Assembly: GCA_965153285.1 (NCBI GenBank)
Contig: OZ229115.1
Direction: 5' to 3' (one strand)
Origin: Podarcis tiliguerta
Taxonomy: Eukaryota
Length of the DNA stretch: 64,000 nt
Shown here: positions 17,989 through 62,449 of the stretch, piece by piece
Numbering within the stretch: the stretch's first letter is position 1
Layout: each line of letters starts with the position of its first letter
Made by a program: the position numbers and the translations under genes
The notes under the pieces: model-generated
The model's database searches: none
What the model was told of the DNA's origin: nothing
The model's input: only the letters and a program-made list of their open reading frames with translations

Positions 17989-18299
17989 TATTTTAGTAGG
18001 AAAGGAGATGGGAGGGGGGAAAGCGCAGAATGAGAACCTGGATTTCCGGCTTTTAGGAGGATCTGCCCAGGGTCACCTTGCAGGGGTCCTTGACGGTTAT
18101 AAGACCAATGCAATGCATTAGGGGGAGCTGTATGCGCAGGCACGTGGGGCACCACACACATCACCAGCCACATCCGAGCCTTCACACAACAACACGGGCA
18201 GATCAGGGCGGCCTGAGCAGGCCGAGGCCATGAGATGGGGAGCTGGACTTGTGTAAGGTGGGGGGGGGGGGGGGAGGTGTCTTCTTGGTCACCAAAACC

Positions 18300-18830
18300 A
18301 GCTCATGCGTTCAGTGGGGAAAGCCTGAAGGGCGCTTCTCCCTCAGAGGGAAGGCCTCGCCGCCCACAACGCGAAGCGGAGCCCGGAGGCCTGTCACGCA
18401 AGGCGCGTGACACGCCACTACACACCCACCCACCCGAATTTCACCGATGGCGGGGGGAGGACAACCGCCGCTTACCTCTGTTTCCTCGACCACTTCGGGG
18501 GCCCTAGTCACGAGATGCGTCCCACTTCTCGCGAGAGCCGACGCTGCGAGATCAGGGCGGAGCTCAAAGGGCCAACGGGACTGAACTAAGAAGCGGGTGG
18601 GGAGAATGGTTTGTGCGCGCGTGCGGGAGGTGGGGGGCGGGGCCTGGAACCCAGCGCTCCGCGAATTCAAAAAGGAGAGGGCGCGAGGTAAAAAAAAAAG
18701 CGAGAGACGTTAGGTTCCTCGTTTCCACGGTAACCGCAGAGGCCGCTTCTCTCCCGTCGCGAGCTCCGGGCGTGAGGAGAAGAGTTTCTCTCTTCCCGCC
18801 TTTCCTCCCCCCGAACCTTCAGGCTTCGTT
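18300..18830 (-). promoter_or_regulatory. CpG-island promoter and non-coding first exon of the HCCS-like gene (donor at 18476)
   Basis: High CpG density; donor CAGAG|gtaagc at 18476/18475; TCTCGCGAGA palindrome 18527-18536; GC boxes; NRF1-like gcgcgtgcg near 18617; X-box-like gtttccacggtaac 18721-18734. Confidence 0.75.
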
Positions 18831-19141
18831 TTGAAAGGGGGGGGAGGGAGTGTAAATAATAGCACTGAGCATGCTACGAGTGCCTTTCCTTCTCCATGGA
18901 GTGACTATAAACCTCACAGCTTAGCCAATGGCGCTTAGTTTCCCATGTCAGAGGTTTCAAGGCGAGTAAGCTCGATCATTGTCCCTTTTCACGTGAGGAA
19001 ATTAAGCCTTGGTGGTGACCAATGGGGCAAAATGTGCTTTATCGTGTCAGTCATTTAATCCATAGGGTCCTCTTCATTTACTAGTCGATGCTGACTGTGG
19101 ATAGATAACCACGCCGTCCCCTATTTGCGTGTGTGTAAAGA

Positions 19142-19820: not shown

Positions 19821-21474
19821 TCCTAAAGTATGCAAAACCTTGCACCAAAGTAATTAACTTTTTTTTTAAAAAAAAAGGAAAGCAAAACTGGACAAAAATA
19901 CATATTGATGTCAAATATTATTCCACTAGCAGTTCAGCACCAGTGCTGTGGACAGATCAATTAAAACTATGATCCGTTCTGGAAGAACCACCATTCTGGC
20001 AGGTAAAGAAAAAAACACCACCTCAGGTCTTTAATCGGAACTTAGCTTTACAAGTGGCACTGAATGAATTGGGGAACAGATAGGGTACACAACACATTAT
20101 TTTTCCAACTGTTAAAAAATGAAACTATCTGACAACCCTGAAAAATTCAGCTACTTAATTCAGAGTATTACTAGCATTTTATTTATTATTGTGTGTGTGT
20201 CCTTTATTCATTGTAAAATAGTGCTCTGTTAGTTTGCAGCAGCAACAAGTTTAATACTATGGCAGGTAATAAAACTGCCATTAGCTTGTGTAGACTGCAG
20301 TGAATTTCATTAAGCGCACAGAATTAGTCTGTATATGTATAATCAATAATATTGTTTACAAAAGCACTTACAATGTTGCTTTCTACAGTAAAGCAATATT
20401 TAATTGTATCACATCTCTTATTGCTTTGGCATGTTAAGTTCTCGAATTCACAAAATAATTAAGCTTTATAGTCCAGTAGCTTTAAACATCTGTAGAAATC
20501 GTTTATCCATTACTCCTAATGTTTCTACAATTGGAGACTATGAAAAAGAATTATAAGTTTATTCAATGCTGCTATACAGATCTAAATTCTAGAATAGCAA
20601 GTGAGAACAGAAAAAGAATGAACTAAGTGGCTCATAGAAAAACAAACGCCAGTAGTTACACAGTCATATTATTGTATTGCTTTATTATGTCCACATGGAA
20701 CTATAGTGCTGCTATTAAGACTGTTCAAATGAGTAGACAAAATGACAAGATTGCCTACCACTACTAACTTTGCAAGTAGAAGCAGCTGCAGAGGGAATAA
20801 TGGCTCTGCCTACTGAATTACATCCTCAGTTCATGCAAGGTATGTTAATGATACTCAACAAGCTTGACTAGCATCCCACATGAACAATGTATGTGGCTCA
20901 AACATTCCCAGGAACTGATTGCAAGAGGCGCAGGGGTTGTGTGGAAGTCACACAACAATTCATCAACAAACAAGTAAATGTGGAAGAAGGTTCTGCAAAT
21001 ATTTGAAATCTACAGATGTAGAATAATGGAGTGGCACAACAACCAGAAATGATATAAAAATTATGAACACTGCACACTGAGGGAACAACCACTTAGGTAA
21101 GGCCTGCACAAGGTGTCCGCAGATACAAGTTTCTTAGTTGTGAAATTAGTTCCTAAAGGACACTTGGATGACTCTGCTTCGTTTTTTGCAAGCACTTTTA
21201 ATGAATGAAGTTTTAACCTGGATTTCTGCTTATAACTTCAAAGCCCTTACTGAAGTTCTCTGCTTTCAGTGTTGCTGTTTTGTTGTAATTATTTTAGTTC
21301 CATGAATGGATTTTAATTTGTTGTTGCTGTTATATTCTTTATTGTTAGATAAAGAATTCACATACAATAATATATATATATATATATATATATGCTTTCG
21401 TAGATTTTCACGGGTACAGGAATGCAGGTTTTGGTGTCCTCGGGTGTCTTCCCGTGTAAAAGTTGGGGTGTCTA

Positions 21475-21514
21475 GGCGACGTTTCGACGAGGTCTCACTC
21501 GTCATCTTCAGGCT
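21475..21514 (-). ncRNA. Minimal type I hammerhead ribozyme motif in the PLE 3' end (left copy)
   Basis: Mirror image of 24708-24747. Confidence 0.7.
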
Positions 21515-23150
21515 GGTGCTTTCGGCTTCTTGTTACTGGAACAGAGCAGGATCTCAGTGTTTGAGTTCCTATAAATACTGTTGAGGAGGTGTGGTGTATA
21601 GCCTCCAATGTTCTGGGCAGAGAGGAGGTTCCCAGGCTAGTGTGCCTTTTCTTCTTTTGTTCCTTAATTACTTGAGGGATATCTTGAGTGATTTCTTGAG
21701 TGATTTCCTGAATCCCACTTAGGTGGGTCATTAGGTGTGGATTAGTTGCTAAAGCCTTCGTGTCTTGAACTCTTGAACTTTGTGAAGAGTTTTTCTGAGA
21801 AGATGGTTGTACTGCACTTGGCTGTGCTCTGGCTTGGCTTCGTGTATAGGGGCGAGCTGTGGTTTTGTGGCCTGTGCCAGCCAGATCTGTGTAGGGATTG
21901 CAGGGGGGTGCAGCATCCGGAGGTGCCACCCTGGTTTGGCTACTGGATGGTGTCTGTAATTTATCTGTGGAGAGGGTCTGGGTTTGGGTCTGGTGTGGTT
22001 GATTGGTGATGGCGTTCTGTGTGCCTCTGGATCTGGTGTCAGATTTTGTGGGGAGGGCTAATTTCCAGATGTCTGGCAAGCGGGATGTGTCGTCACGCTT
22101 GTTCATGTTGTGAGGGTGTTTCTCTATCTCGATGGCTTCCATGATTATTCTCTTGTGGTGATGTTCCATGTTAAAGAGCAATTTGGAATCTGCAAAATTA
22201 ATTTCGTGTCCTGTTTCTTTCATGTGTTGGAAAAGAGAGGAAGTTTTTTCTTCTTTTTTGACGGCATTCTTGTGTTCTGCGATCCGTGCATTTATTCGTC
22301 TGTTTGTTTGTCCAATGTACGTGGCTGGGCAGACTTTGCAGGGTATTTCATAGACCCCTTGGTTTTCCAACTGAATTTTATCCTTGGGGTTTCTGAGGAT
22401 ATTGGCTATTTTTTGGTTGGTGCAAAAGGCTGTTTTGATATTGTGTTTATGGAGGATTTTGCTAATTTTATCTGTAGTGCCCTTGATATAAGGAAGGAGG
22501 GCTATGCCATTGTTTTCTTCTGTGTCTTGGTTTTTGGGGGGTGTTTCTTTTTGGATTAGCTTCGTAACCCTGTTTTGCTGGTATCCATTGGCAATTAACA
22601 CATTTGAGAGATTCTGTAACTCAGTTGTCAAGTGGTCTTCGTCAGCCAGGCGTTTGGTTCTGGAGATGAGAGTCTTGGCTACGGAGTTTATTTGTGCAGG
22701 GTGGTGGTGTGATTGTGCATGTAAGTAGCGGTTGGTGTGTGTTTTTTTCCGGTAGATAGTGTGTCCTAGGGAGCCATCAGGTTTTTTGTAGATTAGGACG
22801 TCAAGGAAGGGAAGTTGGTTGTTGGCTTCTATTTCCATAGTGAATTGTATTTTGGGGTGTAGGCTGTTGAGATGTGTGAGGAAGCTATCCAGTTTTTCCT
22901 TCCCGTGTGGCCAAATTACAAAGGTGTCGTCAACATATCTGAGCCAAAGTTTGGGTTTGTGTTCTGACTTGTCTAAAGCATTGGTTTCAAAGTGTTCCAT
23001 GTACAGGTTAGCGATGACCGGTGAGAGGGGTGATCCCATAGGTGCTCCTTCTATCTGTTTGTATCTTTGTCCATTGTGGATGAAGTACGTGTTGGTTAGG
23101 CAGTGGTTGGTCAGGTCCAAGATGTATTCGGGGGGATTGTATTTGTTTTG
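21495..23150 (-). CDS. 5'-truncated PLE reverse transcriptase + GIY-YIG endonuclease, left copy
   Basis: YKQIEGAPMGSPLSPVIANLYME, WLRYVDDTF, LPFLDV, YRKKTHT (RT); GVYEIPCKVCPATYIGQT...EH...H...GH (GIY-YIG with CCHH). The first ~10 aa of the 561-aa track ORF come from reading across the inversion junction. Confidence 0.92.
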   Translation of the reverse strand, partial: QNKYNPPEYILDLTNHCLTNTYFIHNGQRYKQIEGAPMGSPLSPVIANLYMEHFETNALDKSEHKPKLWLRYVDDTFVIWPHGKEKLDSFLTHLNSLHPKIQFTMEIEANNQLPFLDVLIYKKPDGSLGHTIYRKKTHTNRYLHAQSHHHPAQINSVAKTLISRTKRLADEDHLTTELQNLSNVLIANGYQQNRVTKLIQKETPPKNQDTEENNGIALLPYIKGTTDKISKILHKHNIKTAFCTNQKIANILRNPKDKIQLENQGVYEIPCKVCPATYIGQTNRRINARIAEHKNAVKKEEKTSSLFQHMKETGHEINFADSKLLFNMEHHHKRIIMEAIEIEKHPHNMNKRDDTSRLPDIWKLALPTKSDTRSRGTQNAITNQPHQTQTQTLSTDKLQTPSSSQTRVAPPDAAPPCNPYTDLAGTGHKTTARPYTRSQARAQPSAVQPSSQKNSSQSSRVQDTKALATNPHLMTHLSGIQEITQEITQDIPQVIKEQKKKRHTSLGTSSLPRTLEAIHHTSSTVFIGTQTLRSCSVPVTRSRKHQPEDDE

Positions 23151-23182
23151 GACAAAGATACAAACAGATAGAAGGAGCACCT

Positions 23183-24727
23183 ATGGGATCACCCCTCTCA
23201 CCGGTCATCGCTAACCTGTACATGGAACACTTTGAAACCAATGCTTTAGACAAGTCAGAACACAAACCCAAACTTTGGCTCAGATATGTTGACGACACCT
23301 TTGTAATTTGGCCACACGGGAAGGAAAAACTGGATAGCTTCCTCACACATCTCAACAGCCTACACCCCAAAATACAATTCACTATGGAAATAGAAGCCAA
23401 CAACCAACTTCCCTTCCTTGACGTCCTAATCTACAAAAAACCTGATGGCTCCCTAGGACACACTATCTACCGGAAAAAAACACACACCAACCGCTACTTA
23501 CATGCACAATCACACCACCACCCTGCACAAATAAACTCCGTAGCCAAGACTCTCATCTCCAGAACCAAACGCCTGGCTGACGAAGACCACTTGACAACTG
23601 AGTTACAGAATCTCTCAAATGTGTTAATTGCCAATGGATACCAGCAAAACAGGGTTACGAAGCTAATCCAAAAAGAAACACCCCCCAAAAACCAAGACAC
23701 AGAAGAAAACAATGGCATAGCCCTCCTTCCTTATATCAAGGGCACTACAGATAAAATTAGCAAAATCCTCCATAAACACAATATCAAAACAGCCTTTTGC
23801 ACCAACCAAAAAATAGCCAATATCCTCAGAAACCCCAAGGATAAAATTCAGTTGGAAAACCAAGGGGTCTATGAAATACCCTGCAAAGTCTGCCCAGCCA
23901 CGTACATTGGACAAACAAACAGACGAATAAATGCACGGATCGCAGAACACAAGAATGCCGTCAAAAAAGAAGAAAAAACTTCCTCTCTTTTCCAACACAT
24001 GAAAGAAACAGGACACGAAATTAATTTTGCAGATTCCAAATTGCTCTTTAACATGGAACATCACCACAAGAGAATAATCATGGAAGCCATCGAGATAGAG
24101 AAACACCCTCACAACATGAACAAGCGTGACGACACATCCCGCTTGCCAGACATCTGGAAATTAGCCCTCCCCACAAAATCTGACACCAGATCCAGAGGCA
24201 CACAGAACGCCATCACCAATCAACCACACCAGACCCAAACCCAGACCCTCTCCACAGATAAATTACAGACACCATCCAGTAGCCAAACCAGGGTGGCACC
24301 TCCGGATGCTGCACCCCCCTGCAATCCCTACACAGATCTGGCTGGCACAGGCCACAAAACCACAGCTCGCCCCTATACACGAAGCCAAGCCAGAGCACAG
24401 CCAAGTGCAGTACAACCATCTTCTCAGAAAAACTCTTCACAAAGTTCAAGAGTTCAAGACACGAAGGCTTTAGCAACTAATCCACACCTAATGACCCACC
24501 TAAGTGGGATTCAGGAAATCACTCAAGAAATCACTCAAGATATCCCTCAAGTAATTAAGGAACAAAAGAAGAAAAGGCACACTAGCCTGGGAACCTCCTC
24601 TCTGCCCAGAACATTGGAGGCTATACACCACACCTCCTCAACAGTATTTATAGGAACTCAAACACTGAGATCCTGCTCTGTTCCAGTAACAAGAAGCCGA
24701 AAGCACCAGCCTGAAGATGACGAGTGA
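23183..24727 (+). CDS. 5'-truncated PLE reverse transcriptase + GIY-YIG endonuclease, right copy
   Basis: 514 aa identical to the left copy; starts at the internal Met of the PMGSPLSP motif, so the RT N-terminal motifs are missing. Confidence 0.92.
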   Translation: MGSPLSPVIANLYMEHFETNALDKSEHKPKLWLRYVDDTFVIWPHGKEKLDSFLTHLNSLHPKIQFTMEIEANNQLPFLDVLIYKKPDGSLGHTIYRKKTHTNRYLHAQSHHHPAQINSVAKTLISRTKRLADEDHLTTELQNLSNVLIANGYQQNRVTKLIQKETPPKNQDTEENNGIALLPYIKGTTDKISKILHKHNIKTAFCTNQKIANILRNPKDKIQLENQGVYEIPCKVCPATYIGQTNRRINARIAEHKNAVKKEEKTSSLFQHMKETGHEINFADSKLLFNMEHHHKRIIMEAIEIEKHPHNMNKRDDTSRLPDIWKLALPTKSDTRSRGTQNAITNQPHQTQTQTLSTDKLQTPSSSQTRVAPPDAAPPCNPYTDLAGTGHKTTARPYTRSQARAQPSAVQPSSQKNSSQSSRVQDTKALATNPHLMTHLSGIQEITQEITQDIPQVIKEQKKKRHTSLGTSSLPRTLEAIHHTSSTVFIGTQTLRSCSVPVTRSRKHQPEDDE

Positions 24728-24747
24728 GACCTCGTCGAAACGTCGCC
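24708..24747 (+). ncRNA. Minimal type I hammerhead ribozyme motif in the PLE 3' end (right copy)
   Basis: CTGAAGA-t-GACGAG[tgagac]CTCGTC-GAAA-CGTC: conserved core boxes, 6-bp stem II, palindromic ACGT in place of helix III; stem I is weak. Confidence 0.72.
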
Positions 24748-27700
24748 TAGACACCCCAACTTTTACACGGGAAGACACCCGAGGACACCAAAACCTGCAT
24801 ATATATATATATATATATATATATGCCCATCTTAATAGATGGATGGAAACAACTGTTGAGTAATCAGTGTATTATGACTTTGAACTCAAAATGGCACACA
24901 CACAAAATCAAATTGGCAGACTAATTAAGACAAAAAAGTACCATACATGTGCAATTCTGAGGTTGTGTACACTATGGGCATAACATCACATTAACAAACA
25001 AGCAAACCCCAAAACAACTTGTTTGATATTAAAGATCTTCTTTCCAGAGCCTTTGGACACACATCCCAGACCTCTCATTTTTCACAAAATCAGCAAGAAG
25101 AAAGGATATCTGATGACACACTTAATCACTGCTATAAGGAAAAAGGTCTCACACAGTATAGTGAGGTCTCACAGGAGAGGAATGGGAACGGAAATCATTT
25201 TCACTTTTCAGAAATCTTCTCATTACCACTATACAGCAAACCCGACCACTTTAGTGCTATAGCACAGCAGAAAAACATTTCAGAAGAAATATACAGAAAA
25301 TGACCCATTTCACCCTTTCCTCACCCCTCACCCCACCCTATGTTCCAAGCAGCACTACAAGATTCCTGTTCCAGATTTGTTGGAGGGGTATTGATACACA
25401 GCAACTCCTGTTGTGGGTCCACAATGATCATGTTTATGTAACCAAATGTATTATATTTGGTTGTAAGAGCTTATCACAATATAGAAGATAACTTTTCACA
25501 CTTCACTATAAAAAATCTACTTAGCTGGTCGCTATTACTTTTTTATAGTGTCTTAATTCTGCCACACGAGGCAGCCATCTCATTCTACCTCACAGTGTGT
25601 TAGGCTTGTATATACAATAATTGAAAAAGTTGTTCGCAGAAGAAAATTCTGGCTACTCCTTTCCCACAGGAAATAAGCCTTTTTATAAAGTAGCCATATT
25701 CAGAAGCTGGCAATGAGTGCCAAGTCATTCCTGTTCGTCATAACAGGAGTAGAGTGTTTTACTTAACATAGTACACACAATTTGAATGAAGAAATTCCAA
25801 GAAATACTGCATTCTCTTCCTTTATTCTTATTTACCAGTGCCTTGAATACACATGCAACTTATTGCTTAGACATTATTGCATATACCTCAAACATGAGCA
25901 GCCTACACAAATTTACACAAACAGCAAGGCTTTCAAATACCACTGAAGAGCAAACCCATTTATACGCCTATCACAAGCAACATTTAAAAATATTCAAGCA
26001 AATGTTAAAGTTCACAAATTGTTTGACCATCCTATAAAGTCAATAGTGCTATCTCACTCTTTTGTGCCATTATCATTATGGGGCTATCAAATCAAGAATA
26101 TTGCAGGCTTTCAATGTAGTGCAATAGGATTCATAGCCCATCATCTTTATTCCATCCCTGTAAGAGACTTTTCAGTGCTGCCTTTATCAAACATTGTGCT
26201 ATGATTTAATAAGGCCCCATATCATAGATTCTATTGCACCCCTTTTCCAGCATGGATTTACAACTCAGCAATGCATCTCATTATACTTATTTCAGTAGTG
26301 TGATTGGGAAAAACATCTGTGAAAACTAATACAGAAATTTGGTTCTTGTAATGTGACCTATTTATTTGAACCAGATTTCTGAACACTTTCCTTAAGAATT
26401 TGGGCACCAGTAGCAACTGCTTTAAAAAATATATATTCTGCAGTACACACTACATTAACTATACATCTGCTTCAGTTTGTAGTAAATATTTACAGATTGT
26501 ATCAGATTGTGTCCCTCCGCTGCAAGAAGGCTCTTTGATGCAGAGGATGCTTCTAGGATCAGAAAAGGGGTTGGGCAATTTCCCCATTTCCTCTTGGAGT
26601 TCCCTGTTGCAGTCCCTAAAGCTGAGCCGCAGGAGAATGTCGTAATTTGCAAAAATCACCTCTCCTCCACCACTTTTTGTTCTCAAAGAAACTTTGCTGG
26701 ATCAAAGTGTTCCAAGACACAATTTGATACAACTCTTAAGATTTCATAACTGACAGACATAATCCCACAAACATGTTCCTGTCAGGAAGAGGGTCAAACT
26801 AGGTGAGATGCTGGAGTTCTATGGCTAGAACTTCAAAAATCTGTTTCTTTAAAAAATCAGCTGTGGCCGGGGGGGCGATCCGAAATAGACAGTGGTGGTG
26901 GTGGTGTTATAACCTGCCTTCATGGTATTTCCCTGCTGGAAATCACTGGCTTTGAACATATTTGCTGCAACTTAAAAATAAAGAACTTTCAGAAACATCA
27001 CCCCATGTGTTTTTTCCCATATGCTGGAGCAAACAGTTGTGGGCCGTGTGTGAGATCATATTCAGCAGAAATTTGGACAGGAAAAACAGGTTAACTCCCC
27101 TGCCTTGCTCAATCCTGATCAGTGTTTCTGCTTCTGCCTTTTTTAAAAAAAGAAAATGTCAGGAATTAAAGTCATGGAGCTTTCATATTATGCCTAATTT
27201 GACCCAGTTTGATTACTCAGAGATATGTCTAATGAAAGGGGGGACCACAATATTAGGCAGTCAAAAGCATAGGTACACATTACATATATTCTCACTTTCT
27301 GTATTTTGGAATTCACTAGCATAAGGGTCTACTTCATAATGCCAGTGTTACCCCAGGCATGATTTGTAGGCTATTACTGGATTAGTAGTATGAATATAAA
27401 ATGATCTCTGTTTTCCCATCAGGCTCATTTGCCTTGCAGGGTTAAAGAAGATGGTGCTGCTAGCATACATGATTTTAATTATAGTACAAAATAACAAAAC
27501 TCACCTTCAACCAGGTATGAGAGAATATATTTATTATTCCATCTTGGGGTTTAAAATTGTTCAAGCAGGACATCAAAAGGGCATATTTTAAGTAAGTATT
27601 TCAAAGGATTTTCAAAGCAGTTAGCAGCACAACCCTATAAATGCCTGCTCAAAGGCAAGTCCCATTGATTTCAATGGAACTTATGGCAAAGTAAGTGAGT

Positions 27701-34141: not shown

Positions 34142-34288
34142 CAGAATCATAGAATTGTTGAGTTGGAAGGGACCACGAGGGTCATCAACTCCAACCCCCT
34201 GCAATGCAGGAATCTTTGGCTCAACATGGGGCTTGAACCCACAACCCTGAAATTAAGAGTCTCATGCTCTATTGACTGAGCTATCCCA
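34142..34288 (-). mobile_element. tRNA-headed SINE with CR1-type tail (Squam2-like)
   Basis: Reverse complement of the family at 17603-17751. Confidence 0.7.
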
Positions 34289-54770: not shown

Positions 54771-55299
54771 TCTTTGGTGCATTGTTTCAAAGCGGACAGG
54801 CCACTTTCAAAGCAGGGAAACAGCAGCACAGCCTAAGCTACAGTTAACACTCAATTTTTGGTTGCTACCTGGGCCCTCTCTCCTTGTTTACAGGGGTGCC
54901 AACTTAAAATATGGGGGAGGGGCAAGTAAGCCCCACCACACACAATTGATCACATGACATGGCACCCACCCACCATTTGAATGGCAATGTTCATCACCTT
55001 TTTTGAGGGGGGCAGCCCCCTCAAATATTTTATTGGGGCTGCAGAAGGGGCCTTGTCCCCTAAGCGCTGGATCCTATGCGTCAGTTATCTTTGTCCTTAG
55101 TAATTCAACCAGACTCCTGGTCCTGCCCTTTTCTCGTTTCTTCTCCAGCAGCGCCCCATTTTCAGTCCCCAGAAGAGAGGGAGGAAACCAAAGTCAGGCA
55201 TGGTGCTGGGAATAGGAAAGAAAAGAGAGGCCTGAAGAAGAGGGATCTCCTTGCAAAAACAGTTCCTCCCACCCACCCCGAGACTCCCTCACCTTTTCA

Positions 55300-56200
55300 C
55301 CCGCGCGCGCCCGATCCAGCAATTGCAGGTGCTGCTCCTTCCCTTAGCCACACAACGCATTGGGGAGCGAGGCGGTGTGTGTGTGTGTGTCGTGCGCGGA
55401 AAGGTTGCTACGGCATTTCGCCTCCCTCTCCGGCGGCGCTGCGCGCATCCTCACCTGCGCCCCGCTGGCTCCCCTTTGCCTTTAATAAGCCCTATAGCAC
55501 TCGCCCAGAAGCGCGCGCCGCGCACCAGTGTCTGCAGCCGCGCCGAGAGAAAGGCGGCATCCCCGGACACGCCGCGCAAGGGGCCTACGCGCCCGACACA
55601 CGACCCGGTGCCCAGACACGTCTTCTCCCCTTTGTAGATGGGAGAAGCATTCCCCCTCCCCCGCTGCTCACCTGAAGTCTCACCGCGGCCGGCCGGGCGG
55701 CCCTGCCATCCCTCCTGGCGGGTCCCTGCGGCGGGGGAAAAGCCCCTCACACGCCCACGCGGCGCGGCTTCTCCGGCGGAAACGGCCTCCTCCACTGCTG
55801 CTGCTGCTACTGCGGCAGCCGCGACAGGCGCCCACTGCGGGATCGCGTTACGCCGGCCTCAGCCTTAAAGGGGCCGCCGAACCGCCGCCGCCGCCTCGAC
55901 GTTCCCAGTTGCCGCAGGGCGGGAAGGGGGAAGCCGGCCAGCCAGCCGCTCTCACCGCCGCCTCCTGGCCGCCCGCCGAGCGCCCGCGGCGAGAAGCAAG
56001 AAGCAAGCCCGCCTCGCCGGCCGGCCGGCCGGCTCCAAGATGCAAGCAGGCAGGCGGCAGAGGCGGCCACCTGCCTCCCACCGAAGGGCACTTGCTTGCG
56101 GGTTGTTGATGTGGGAAGCGCCCCCCCCCCTTTGGAGACGGGGCAGGAGGCGGGAGTTGGAGACGGACCCAGAAAAATCCACACACACCCCCGTCGCCGC
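55300..56200 (-). promoter_or_regulatory. CpG island with the presumed promoter and non-coding first exon of TLCD4
   Basis: Very GC/CpG-rich; candidate minus-strand donors CAG|gtgagc (55672), GCG|gtgaga (55684) and CAG|gtgagg (55455); 8.7 kb upstream of the first coding exon. Confidence 0.75.
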
Positions 56201-60454: not shown

Positions 60455-62449
60455 TGTGTGTGTGTATAAAATAAAATTTATACACCATGATGTACACCAC
60501 GATTTACAAAAAGATGGAGAATAAAGTCAAGAAAAATTAAAAACTTAAAACATACAAAAGTATAAATAAGTATTTTTGTACATTTATAAGCACTGTTGTA
60601 TCTTTATATTTGCTGGTTACTTTGGGGAACCTGGGGTGTATCATACACATATAGTATTATATGTATATTAATGCTGATAATATGCTAGAATTGTTTGCAT
60701 TTTTACTGGAAGCAGGGTGGCTGGGTTTCTGCTTGTTCTTTTGTAAACCATTTTTGGTATAGACTAGCCTAGATAAATAAATTATTCTTGAAGGCTATGG
60801 TCAGGAAGGGGATTGATGAGTGAAGCCTTTGTGCATTTTTTATAAGCCTCAGCACCCTCTGCATATTCAAGTGGCATCAGATACAAATAGGTTAGAGAAA
60901 TAGGTTAGGGAAATTGAGATATATTTGCAATGGTTTAAAACAAACAAACAAAAAAAGCAGGGAAGAAACACAATAAGGCACTAAACTGAAAAGAAATCTC
61001 AACATTTTCCTCATTTCCCTCATTCCCACGCTCCTGGGTAATTCCACAACCGATACATTTATAAACAGCTTTGTACAAGAGCATGCAATAATGGGCAGGT
61101 GCTCAGACACACACCCCAGCAGACAGAGAAGTGGATAAATATCAAGGCAGCCAATGATATAAAGAGATGTCAAAGAATTCCAGCAGGAATGGCAGTGGAA
61201 ATTGCCAATGCCCACATATTCATCTTATGTCTGGAAAGAAAATCAATCCAGTGAATTCAACTGGTATTCACTGTGTTGTTTTCAGTCTGCAAATAATAGG
61301 GATAGGTAATTGATGACATTTGCATTGTCTTTTCTTTTGCATTATGTTTCTCCATAAAGGCTCAGAGAAGTCAGAAAATCCTACAGATACTATAGATACC
61401 AAAAGCGATCTCTGCCCAAGCATTTTATGGTCTAGCTTTACATTGCGCTTCCCAAGTACACAGGTTTTTGCAGACTTCAGCTTAAAACCATGTAATTGAA
61501 CATCAAGAGCCCAAGTTATGACTACTCACCTCAATCATGGGCTGATTTTCCAGTCTGAAGAGTATCCAAAATCTCCCAGAAGCCTTGCTGTGAATATGTG
61601 GTTATTCTGTACTTCTCAGAATGCAACACTGCCACTTCTGCTTGCTTCCCAATAAAAATAAGGTCAGGTTGCTTTTCTCAAGAGAGAACGTGCCAGGCCC
61701 AGAAACCTAGCAATTACATCACACTGTAATATATAATCACATAGCCATAATCTGAGGATTTAACAAACCCTTACATGTTTTGTTTGTATTTTGTTCAACT
61801 GCCACACCCAACCTGCTTCCAGGCTATCATAACATCCTGTGCTTTACTCTCACCGTCCCAGACACGGTGCAAGAAATCCATACCACTTTTTAAACTCCGC
61901 AAGCAAACAGATATTAAAATTCATGCCACATCAAATAGCAATTTATAATTGCTTCTCAGCCTTCTGGCTAATATCAAAGTATCTGTTCTTATCAGTTGAA
62001 TATGTAATACAGTATGTTGTCTATGTAAGGACACAGTGTGAATCCAATTTTGGAACCAGGAGTTGGATATGAGGCTTGGTCCACCCACGACATGCATTGA
62101 CCTGATATTGCAGGGCCCAGTGCAATTTCTTTTTTGGTTTAGGAACAGGTGAGTGAGTTCTTTAACTGTTTTCCATTCTCGTCAATGACCGAAATAAATC
62201 GATTCATTCATTAACTTGTTTTCACAAGTATGTTACGAAAAGTTGGTGTTTTTTTAAAAAAAAAAAGTTGGTGTAAACATAGAGATTAGATTGGCAACTG
62301 ACACGTTTTCCTTTTTCTCCCATGTTGGAGTTTTGTAGTAATTGTTCCTCCATTTCTTTGTTCTTTATGACAGCCATCTTCAAAGGGCCGCCACATGCAA
62401 GATGGATCAAGCTTGTTTTCTCCTGTTTTGGGGGCTGGGACCGGACCCA

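What the first reader, a model, noticed from the sequence alone, without database searches (positions are those of the whole stretch)
21392..24800. 3.4-kb palindromic Penelope-like insertion: two 5'-truncated RT/GIY-YIG copies fused head-to-head
Seen: arms 21422-23073 and 23149-24800 (1652 bp each) are reverse complements with no indel, and the sense ORF plus several antisense ORFs translate identically, so identity is at or near 100%. The 75-bp spacer is simply extra RT sequence of the left copy (QNKYNPPEYILDLTNHCLTNTYFIHN). Known: PLEs can carry inverted terminal repeats. Here the duplicated part is not a short pLTR but most of the ORF. Inference: one very recent integration in which both target strands primed reverse transcription from a 3' end and the two cDNAs were joined at their truncated 5' ends, possibly through a TGGA microhomology at 23149-23152. 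This would imply a currently active PLE family that makes long palindromes.
Basis: partly seen in the sequence, partly recalled or inferred. Interest (0 to 1): 0.82.

Follow-up and report, generated by a model that had tools for sequence, protein, structure and literature searches.

The report
Head-to-head Penelope retroelement insertion in lizard
A lizard genome carries a young 3.4-kb insertion made of two identical, front-truncated copies of a Penelope-like jumping gene joined head-to-head inside a (TA)n repeat; this is a real but textbook form of insertion for this kind of element, not a new kind of structure.

Summary
Arms 21422-23073 and 23149-24800 are exact reverse complements (1652 nt, no mismatch), and the 75-nt spacer is extra RT sequence of the left copy. 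Each arm is a 5'-truncated Penelope/Poseidon-type PLE: part of the RT, GIY-YIG endonuclease, minimal hammerhead motif, and the start of the next unit's ORF. The insertion splits a (TA)n microsatellite. A 28-nt "tail" (21394-21421) sits on the left end only. The junction microhomology is TG (2 nt), not TGGA.

Public contigs from another individual of the same species label, and from a second species, join the two flanks with only 74-79 letters between them. The site is therefore empty there and the insertion is young. An assembly fold-back is unlikely, but the central junction of this locus was not confirmed by reads.

Head-to-head inverted 5'-truncated copies, a one-sided 30-40-bp tail, AT-rich or microsatellite targets and pLTR hammerheads are all published PLE hallmarks. 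An Anolis Poseidon protein extends both target strands in vitro.

Fourteen other head-to-head joints in related runs have near-equal arm lengths (rho 0.96). This leaves two mechanisms open: priming on both strands, or fold-back self-priming.

The scan has already noted at least six similar Penelope palindromes in (TA)n tracts elsewhere in this genome. Novelty is low.

The parts
21370..21393 (.). Left half of the target (TA)n microsatellite (12 repeats)
   Evidence: the family's 3' ends abut (TA)n in many contigs (table 7)
21394..21421 (-). 28-nt 'tail': an extension of the left copy's 3' end that is absent from the right copy. It continues the next-unit ORF to codon 37.
   Evidence: A contig of organism B covers 21403-21594 contiguously (record 17), so the tail is element sequence. 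It matches the published one-sided 30-40-bp PLE tail (PMC8557442, PMC3846280, PMC11167929).
21422..23150 (-). Left 5'-truncated PLE copy (1729 nt): RT from QNKYNPPEY onward, thumb/linker, GIY-YIG EN, pLTR-like region, hammerhead motif, first 28 codons of the next-unit ORF
   Evidence: The family sequence continues past 23150 with AATGGCTGTC... in all four runs (table 7).
22863..23108 (-). RVT_1 match (residues 25-106 of the ORF, includes YVDD) in the left copy. The right copy's matching stretch (23149-23359, +) lacks the first 41 nt.
   Evidence: E 1.6e-08, above the Pfam cut-off
22239..22358 (-). GIY-YIG endonuclease core (GVYEIPCKVCPATYIGQT, with two Cys inside the core). Mirror copy at 23864-23983 (+).
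   Evidence: E 6e-04, just under the Pfam cut-off; relatives carry PF01541/PF26215; motif read directly from the ORF
23074..23148 (-). 75-nt spacer: RT sequence present only in the left copy
23149..23150 (.). TG: the only letters that fit both copies at the head-to-head junction (2-nt microhomology)
   Evidence: (loose end at 23150)
23149..24800 (+). Right 5'-truncated PLE copy (1652 nt). It ends at the family's main 3' terminus, directly against (TA)n. The final T is shared with the repeat.
24711..24744 (+). Minimal hammerhead motif: CUGAAGA, an extra U, a 6-bp helix II (G10.1-C11.1), GAAA, palindromic ACGU, C17. The stop codon of the upstream ORF lies in loop II (24725-24727). The ATG of the next-unit ORF is at 24717. 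Mirror copy at 21478-21511 (-).
   Evidence: Sequence read directly. Features as listed in PMC4209133, layout as in PAc (PMC11167929). No Rfam hit.
24717..24800 (+). First 28 codons (MTSETSSKRRLDTPTFTREDTRGHQNLH) of the next tandem unit's ORF, ending in an AC-rich stem-loop where the insertion ends
   Evidence: by analogy with PAc, where RT starts 111-118 nt into the ORF (PMC11167929)
24801..24824 (.). Right half of the target (TA)n microsatellite (12 repeats)

Best explanation
This is a genuine, recent, dead-on-arrival insertion of a Penelope/Poseidon-clade Penelope-like element into a (TA)n microsatellite of a lacertid lizard. It has the classic PLE head-to-head form.

Shown:
- Two identical 5'-truncated copies are joined at their 5' ends by a 2-nt overlap.
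- Both 3' ends face (TA)n.
- One end carries a 28-nt tail.
- The site is empty in other animals.

Inferred mechanism: the dimeric element protein cut both strands of the (TA)n tract. Each 3'-OH primed reverse transcription of the same kind of tandem-unit RNA. The plus strand started at the distal RT start site (ORF +112, giving the tail). The minus strand started at the proximal site (ORF +84, the family's usual end). The two cDNAs grew to similar lengths (1757 and 1652 nt). Their 3' ends then paired through TG/CA, and each was filled in on the other. That produced a perfect palindrome with a 75-nt asymmetric centre.
For: Identity and anatomy.

Empty site: in X1 (same species label, another study) and X2 (another species), one contig covers both flanks with 79 and 74 letters between them (table 8).

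Youth: 0 differences between the arms, and only 1 difference from the high-depth family contigs of X15. The bound is about 0.4-1.1 My at 95% for assumed rates of 0.8-2.4e-9 per site per year.

Family habit:
- At least 24 contigs have (TA)n directly before 21422.
- 14 other head-to-head joints are listed, at about single-copy depth, with 0-5 nt of overlap.

Literature:
- An inverted 5'-truncated copy, a tail at one end only, and a microsatellite bias are described (PMC8557442).
- Head-to-head is the commonest inverted form (PMC3846280).
- The Anolis Poseidon protein cleaves and extends both strands and uses two RT start sites that delimit the tail (PMC11167929).

For this mechanism specifically: the right arm stops to the nucleotide at the family's main 3' end. 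An independent RT start explains that without extra assumptions. The left copy also holds sequence at both of its ends that the right copy lacks, so it cannot have been copied from the right one.
Against: - The central junction and the flank junctions of this very locus were not seen in independent reads. The runs were available only as short contigs, and the listing does not show the junction.
- Arm lengths at 14 other junctions are tightly correlated (rho 0.96, permutation p about 1e-5). Two independent cDNAs would need near-synchronous elongation or a shared stop to give this.
- Perfect arm identity, and the tail and spacer lying on the same copy, are what fold-back copying predicts.
- The in vitro paper does not itself link two-strand extension to inverted copies.
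- The joints in high-copy sequence could in part be library fold-back chimeras.
Confidence: 0.5

Rival explanations
1. Same element and same single event, but the second arm was made by fold-back (snap-back) self-priming. One cDNA was primed on the plus strand from the distal start site and grew to 23150. Its 3' TG then paired with CA at 23072-23073, leaving a 75-nt loop. It was extended back along itself. The hairpin was resolved at the tail boundary, perhaps by the element's endonuclease, and joined to the other (TA)n end.
For: - Arm lengths of 14 other head-to-head joints are nearly equal (median difference 19.5 nt, rho 0.96).
- Arm identity is then automatic.
- Tail and spacer lie on the same (first) copy, as this model requires.
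- Self-priming was proposed for PLE inverted junctions (PMC3846280), and endonuclease-mediated resolution was proposed for the tail (PMC8557442).
- (TA)n is self-complementary, which would ease joining.
Against: - The copied arm would have to stop exactly at the family's usual RT start site, 28 nt short of its template's end. That needs an added cleavage step.
- A 2-bp anchor with a 75-nt loop is weak.
- The length difference grows with arm length (rho 0.77), which simple loops do not predict.
- In vitro, both strands are extended from RNA (PMC11167929).
Confidence: 0.33
2. Assembly or read artefact: the true locus is empty or holds a single copy, and the palindrome comes from a fold-back chimeric long read or a mis-join between repeat copies.
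For: - PLE inverted and tandem structures are known to trouble assemblies (PMC8557442, PMC3846280).
- The site is empty in X1 and X2.
- No listed contig confirms the junction at 23150/23151.
- The exact junction-spanning ORFs are absent from the protein collection.
Against: - Both arms end at the element's own 3' termini, not at arbitrary points.
- The flanks are different unique sequences that are collinear with the empty allele.
- Each flank meets a 3' end, which no single-copy insertion could yield by folding.
- The outer ends differ by a bona fide tail.
- In X15 (0 differences in 1.9 kb of flank) the two flanks lie on separate contigs, unlike in X1 and X2.
- The same architecture recurs at other loci in independent runs.
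Confidence: 0.06
3. Two separate insertions into the same (TA)n tract in opposite orientation, or retrotransposition of an RNA transcribed from an already palindromic master copy.
For: The family strongly prefers (TA)n, and tandem joints through short (TA)n are seen at other loci (table 5c). A palindromic master would explain identical arms.
Against: - No target (TA)n lies between the two 5' ends. They are fused directly with a 2-nt overlap.
- At least 14 different junction positions exist at other loci, so the junctions arise anew each time.
- A 1.65-kb hairpin RNA is a poor RT template.
- The left end carries a 3'-type terminus with a tail, not a copied 5' end.
Confidence: 0.05

Closest known systems
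Canonical EN+ Penelope-like elements with an adjacent inverted 5'-truncated copy (Evgen'ev & Arkhipova 2005 and Arkhipova 2006, as summarised in PMC8557442; Adineta vaga Pen2a in PMC3846280)
   Same: - Single ORF with an RT followed by a C-terminal GIY-YIG.
- Heavy 5' truncation and a head-to-head inverted arrangement.
- Optional tail of about 30 nt at one end only.
- The 3' end includes the first codons of the ORF.
- Hammerhead motif in the pLTR.
- AT-rich or microsatellite target.
   Different: This locus has no full-length unit between the inverted copies, only two truncated copies. The inverted part is long (1.65 kb) and still perfect. The host is a lacertid lizard, and the insertion is absent from other individuals.
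PAc, Poseidon of Anolis carolinensis, characterised in vitro (PMC11167929)
   Same: - Lizard host and Penelope/Poseidon clade (no CxxC linker).
- The ORF starts in hammerhead stem II, and the cut site is about 25-26 nt after the ATG.
- Insertion ends lie in an AC-rich region about 84-112 nt into the ORF (PAc: 111-118).
- Two start sites about 28-30 nt apart define the tail.
- AT-rich target.
- The protein extends both strands.
   Different: An Anolis protein (P0078) is only about 47% identical to this ORF, and whether it is PAc itself is unknown. Nothing was tested biochemically for this family. The target here is specifically (TA)n, whereas a 5'-ATT-3' preference was reported for PAc.
L1 twin priming (5' inversion of LINE-1 insertions; from my own knowledge, Ostertag & Kazazian 2001)
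   Same: Both target strands prime cDNA, and the two cDNA 3' ends join through microhomology and fill-in, giving an inverted junction inside one insertion.
   Different: In L1 the second primer anneals inside the same RNA, so the two segments are different, adjoining parts of the element. Here both arms start at the element's 3' end and duplicate the same 1.65 kb.

Membership tests
Penelope-like elements, EN+ (canonical) | Single ORF with a reverse transcriptase followed by a C-terminal GIY-YIG endonuclease | tested here: met
   Pfam RVT_1 (E 1.6e-08) and GIY-YIG (E 6e-04, slightly under the cut-off) in that order. There are 1039 relatives, most carrying PF00078/PF28514/PF26215 and some PF01541. 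The N-terminal half of the RT is missing because both copies are truncated.
Penelope-like elements, EN+ (canonical) | [quoted passage not shown] | tested here: met
   Read from the ORF: GVYEIPCKVCPATYIGQT ... LFQHMKETGH. By inspection only.
Penelope/Poseidon clade (versus Neptune/Nematis) | No CX2-5CxxC motif in the linker before GIY-YIG (PMC8557442) | tested here: met
   The linker residues before GVYEIPC hold a single Cys. No phylogeny was built, so clade placement rests on this feature and on 47% identity to an Anolis protein.
Penelope-like elements, EN+ (canonical) | Minimal hammerhead motif in the pLTR: extra nucleotide after A9, G10.1-C11.1, long helix II, palindromic 15.2-16.2 (PMC4209133) | tested here: met
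   All listed features are present at 24711-24744 and in the mirror copy. Rfam models give no hit, and self-cleavage cannot be tested here.
Penelope-like elements, EN+ (canonical) | Direct or inverted repeats made of 5'-truncated copies; optional 30-40-bp tail at one end only | tested here: met
   Inverted pair. A 28-nt tail on the left end only, contiguous with the element in another species' copy.
Penelope-like elements, EN+ (canonical) | Target-site duplication of variable length | tested here: inconclusive
   The target is (TA)n: 24 + 24-25 nt flank the insertion, against roughly 43-47 spare letters in the empty alleles. A short duplication can be neither seen nor excluded.
L1-type twin-priming inversion | The two inverted segments are different, adjoining parts of one RNA | tested here: not met
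   Both arms hold the same 1652 nt, including the 3' terminus.
Fold-back read or assembly artefact | Palindrome limits unrelated to element ends; flanks mirrored or unsupported | tested here: not met
   The arms end at the element's 3' termini against (TA)n. The flanks are distinct and collinear with the empty allele in X1 and X2. Reads that span this locus were not available.

The most novel reading that the evidence does not exclude
Together with the family-wide joints, this locus may be in vivo evidence that lizard Poseidon-type PLEs integrate by a concerted reaction of a dimeric RNP on both target strands. In that reading the two cDNAs elongate almost in step: arm lengths are correlated, and their difference grows with length. 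The two strands can also use different RT start sites. This would settle how PLE inverted repeats and one-sided tails arise. It would also mean the family is active now and is seeding kilobase-size perfect palindromes, which are potential fragile sites, that segregate in wild lizard populations.
Probability: 0.3. Interest if true: 0.55.

Novelty: new member of a known kind. Interest (0 to 1): 0.25.

Why it matters
As a structure it is ordinary. Head-to-head truncated copies, a one-sided tail, a hammerhead and an AT-rich target are the published signature of Penelope-like elements.

Its modest value lies elsewhere:
- It is a clean, undecayed insertion that is absent from other individuals, in a vertebrate. 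Every junction can still be read to the nucleotide.
- The family appears very abundant in two species labels and nearly absent in a third.
- A census of such young palindromes could decide between two-strand priming and fold-back self-priming. Useful measures are tail side against spacer side, arm-length difference against length, and microhomology. The PLE literature states this question is open (PMC8557442).
- Perfect kilobase palindromes are also of interest as possible sites of instability.

Tried and rejected
- Rfam at gathering and at E<=1 found no hammerhead family hit. The motif was therefore judged by inspection against the published minimal descriptor.
- blastn and tblastn of the arm and of relatives against the window found no other PLE copy in the 64 kb.
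The Podarcis muralis locus of P0001 could not be read. P0001's first 37 residues match the antisense strand of the RT region, which hints at another inverted pair there. A predicted splice could also explain this, so it was not used as evidence.
- An exact look-up of the three ORFs that cross the central junction found none in the protein collection. This is no evidence either way.
- blastp of the 37-residue N-terminus against the 120 retrieved relatives gave no meaningful match. Reading it as the ORF start rests on analogy with PAc and Pen2a_Av.
- A paper search for Podarcis plus Penelope returned nothing specific. A findings search by words returned nothing.
- ORFs in the flanks show no coding signal, so the insertion lies in non-coding DNA, either intergenic or intronic.
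- The TGGA microhomology was rejected. The family sequence diverges from the window at 23151.
- L1-style twin priming on one RNA was rejected, because both arms contain the 3' end.
- The depth sums were not used as copy numbers, as the tool warns.
- Run and organism names are coded. The species is given only as a lacertid, from the best protein hit.
Full report
**Observation**

The repeat finder reports arms 21422-23073 and 23149-24800 as 1652 nt, 100% complementary, 75 nt apart. A direct string comparison confirms identity with no indel. It also shows that the palindrome stops there. Outside the left arm lie 28 letters with no counterpart on the right. Inside, the 75 letters after 23073 have none either. 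The window has no N and no other copy of the element.

**What the arms are**

- The minus-strand ORF 21495-23180 (561 aa), and its mirror on the plus strand, carry RVT_1 then GIY-YIG.
- The word search found 1039 relatives. The best is a Podarcis muralis protein at 94% identity, followed by snakes, agamids and Anolis, and then many insects. The host is therefore a squamate, most likely a lacertid.
- The endonuclease core reads GVYEIPCKVCPATYIGQT, with the two cysteines typical of PLE endonucleases.
- The linker before it lacks the CX2-5CxxC motif of the Neptune and Nematis clades. This points to the Penelope/Poseidon clade (criteria in PMC8557442; by inspection only, no tree).
- Both copies lack the N-terminal domain and the first RT motifs, so they are dead on arrival.

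**The 3' ends**

The sequence at 24711-24744 is CUGAAGA-U-GACGAG-UGAGAC-CUCGUC-GAAA-CG-UC. It shows every feature listed for the minimal PLE hammerhead in PMC4209133:
- the extra base after A9;
- the G10.1-C11.1 pair;
- a 6-bp helix II;
- a palindromic ACGU in place of helix III;
- C17.

Rfam models do not detect it, so this rests on inspection and on the folded helix II.

The long ORF stops in loop II. An ATG at 24717, at the start of stem II, opens a new frame (MTSETSSKRRLD...). That is the layout described for the Anolis element PAc, whose ORF begins at stem II with the ribozyme cut site 26 nt after the start codon (PMC11167929). Here the distance is 25 nt.

The arm therefore ends 84 nt into the ORF of the next tandem unit, in an AC-rich stem-loop. 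The left copy goes 28 nt further, to ORF +112. In PAc, reverse transcription starts at two adjacent sites 111-118 nt into the ORF, and the stretch between the sites is the "tail" (PMC11167929). [quoted passage not shown]

The 28 letters at 21394-21421 are thus the PLE tail. A contig from another species runs through 21403-21594 without a break (record 17), which shows they are element sequence.

**Target**

(TA)12 lies on each side of the insertion. Across runs, 24 or more contigs have (TA)n directly before 21422 (table 7). (TA)n is therefore the family's habitual target. This agrees with the AT-rich or microsatellite preference reported for PLEs (PMC11167929, PMC8557442).

**The junction**

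- In all four runs the family sequence continues past 23150 with AATGGCTGTCAAGGCTTC...
- On the minus strand this encodes VPINEALTAI ahead of QNKYNPPEY, exactly as in P0001.
- The left copy therefore ends at 23150.
- The right copy cannot start before 23149, because the element has A where the window has T at 23148.
- Only TG fits both copies.

**Is it real and how old**

All runs were available only as short contigs.

- In X1 (same species label as the best holders, different study) one contig covers 20400-21350 and 24842-25800 with 79 letters between.
- In X2 (another species) one contig does the same with 74 letters between (table 8).
- Those sites are empty. Their spare letters roughly equal the two flanking TA tracts together.
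- In X15 the flanks match the window with no difference. X15 may be the assembly's own animal. There the flanks lie on two separate contigs.
- The arms differ from X15's high-depth family contigs at one position only.
- Zero differences between arms gives an upper bound of roughly 0.4-1.1 My, for assumed rates of 0.8-2.4e-9 per site per year (the rates are from my own knowledge). Gene conversion between arms could blur this bound.

An assembly fold-back is unlikely for four reasons. The arms end at the element's own termini. The two flanks are distinct and collinear with the empty allele. Each flank meets a 3' end. The outer ends differ by a genuine tail. Direct confirmation is therefore missing.

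**Family behaviour**

- Depth rises toward the 3' end, which reflects 5' truncation.
- X15 and X1 laid about 330-370 contigs, mostly at least 99% alike. X4 laid about 15,000. X2 laid only 3.
- Table 5 lists 14 joints that pass from the left arm to the right arm. These are other head-to-head junctions, at depths near one or half the single-copy depth, with 0-5 overlapping letters.
- Converted to arm lengths, the two copies of each pair are nearly equal. The median difference is 19.5 nt, 10 of 14 pairs are within 35 nt, Spearman rho is 0.96 and the permutation p is about 1e-5. The difference grows with length (rho 0.77).
- Caveats: these are the 15 best-supported of 55 joints, and fold-back library chimeras in very high-copy sequence cannot be excluded.
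- The scan's own unchecked notes list at least six more Penelope palindromes in (TA)n tracts elsewhere in this genome.

**Mechanism**

Two models fit.

(A) Both strands of the cut (TA)n prime reverse transcription, and the two cDNA 3' ends pair by TG/CA and are filled in.
- For it: the only biochemistry on a related lizard element shows cleavage and extension of both strands, and two start sites used on either strand (PMC11167929).
- For it: the right arm ends to the nucleotide at the family's usual start site.
- For it: the left copy has unique sequence at both ends, so it cannot have been copied from the right one.

(B) One cDNA folds back on itself.
- For it: near-equal arms, automatic arm identity, and tail and spacer lying on the same copy.
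- For it: earlier authors inferred self-priming from palindromic junctions (PMC3846280).
- Against it: an added cleavage at the tail boundary is needed.

I rank A slightly above B (0.5 against 0.33, with identity of the structure itself above 0.9). A census that would separate the two is set out in the next steps.

**Comparison and verdict**

Every feature matches published PLE hallmarks: head-to-head inverted truncated copies, a one-sided tail, a hammerhead at the pLTR-ORF junction and an AT-rich target. It differs from L1 twin priming in that both arms carry the 3' end. It is a new, young member of a known kind. Interest is low to moderate.

**Limits**

No consensus of the family was built.

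Noticed in passing
runs X2 versus X1/X15/X4, laid on window 21422-24800: The subfamily (at least 90% alike) is represented by about 15,000 contigs in organism D and about 350 in organism A. In organism B there are only 2 contigs, at single-copy or lower depth: one longer copy, 98.8% alike, with a tail. Yet B's flanks are as close to the window as those of a conspecific. This suggests a very recent lineage-specific burst, or introgression or transfer of the family.
   Followed up: partly
P0001 (Podarcis muralis LOC144326219), residues 1-37, versus window 22999-23109 (+): The annotated lizard protein starts with 37 residues that are the antisense translation of the PLE RT region, then continues in sense from further upstream in the RT. 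The gene model therefore probably reads across another head-to-head PLE pair, or splices between two inverted copies.
   Followed up: partly
window 61948-62130 (+): Full-length U2 snRNA match (65 bits, E 1.5e-10). It has several non-canonical pairs and internal deletions, so it is possibly a pseudogene or a variant copy.
   Followed up: no
window 34226-34283 (-): Partial tRNA-like match (model positions 8-63, 38 bits). It is likely a tRNA-derived SINE fragment or a pseudogene.
   Followed up: no
window 18001-19000 and 55001-56000: Two GC-rich islands (59% and 65% GC against a background of about 38%). They are probably CpG-island promoters. The PLE insertion lies about 2.5 kb from the first one, in non-coding DNA.
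   Followed up: no
window 23183-24727 (+) and mirror: The PLE ORF stays open for about 190 codons beyond the endonuclease, through the low-complexity pLTR-like region, and stops only in hammerhead loop II. P0001 shares most of this extension. It is unclear whether it is translated or open by chance.
   Followed up: no
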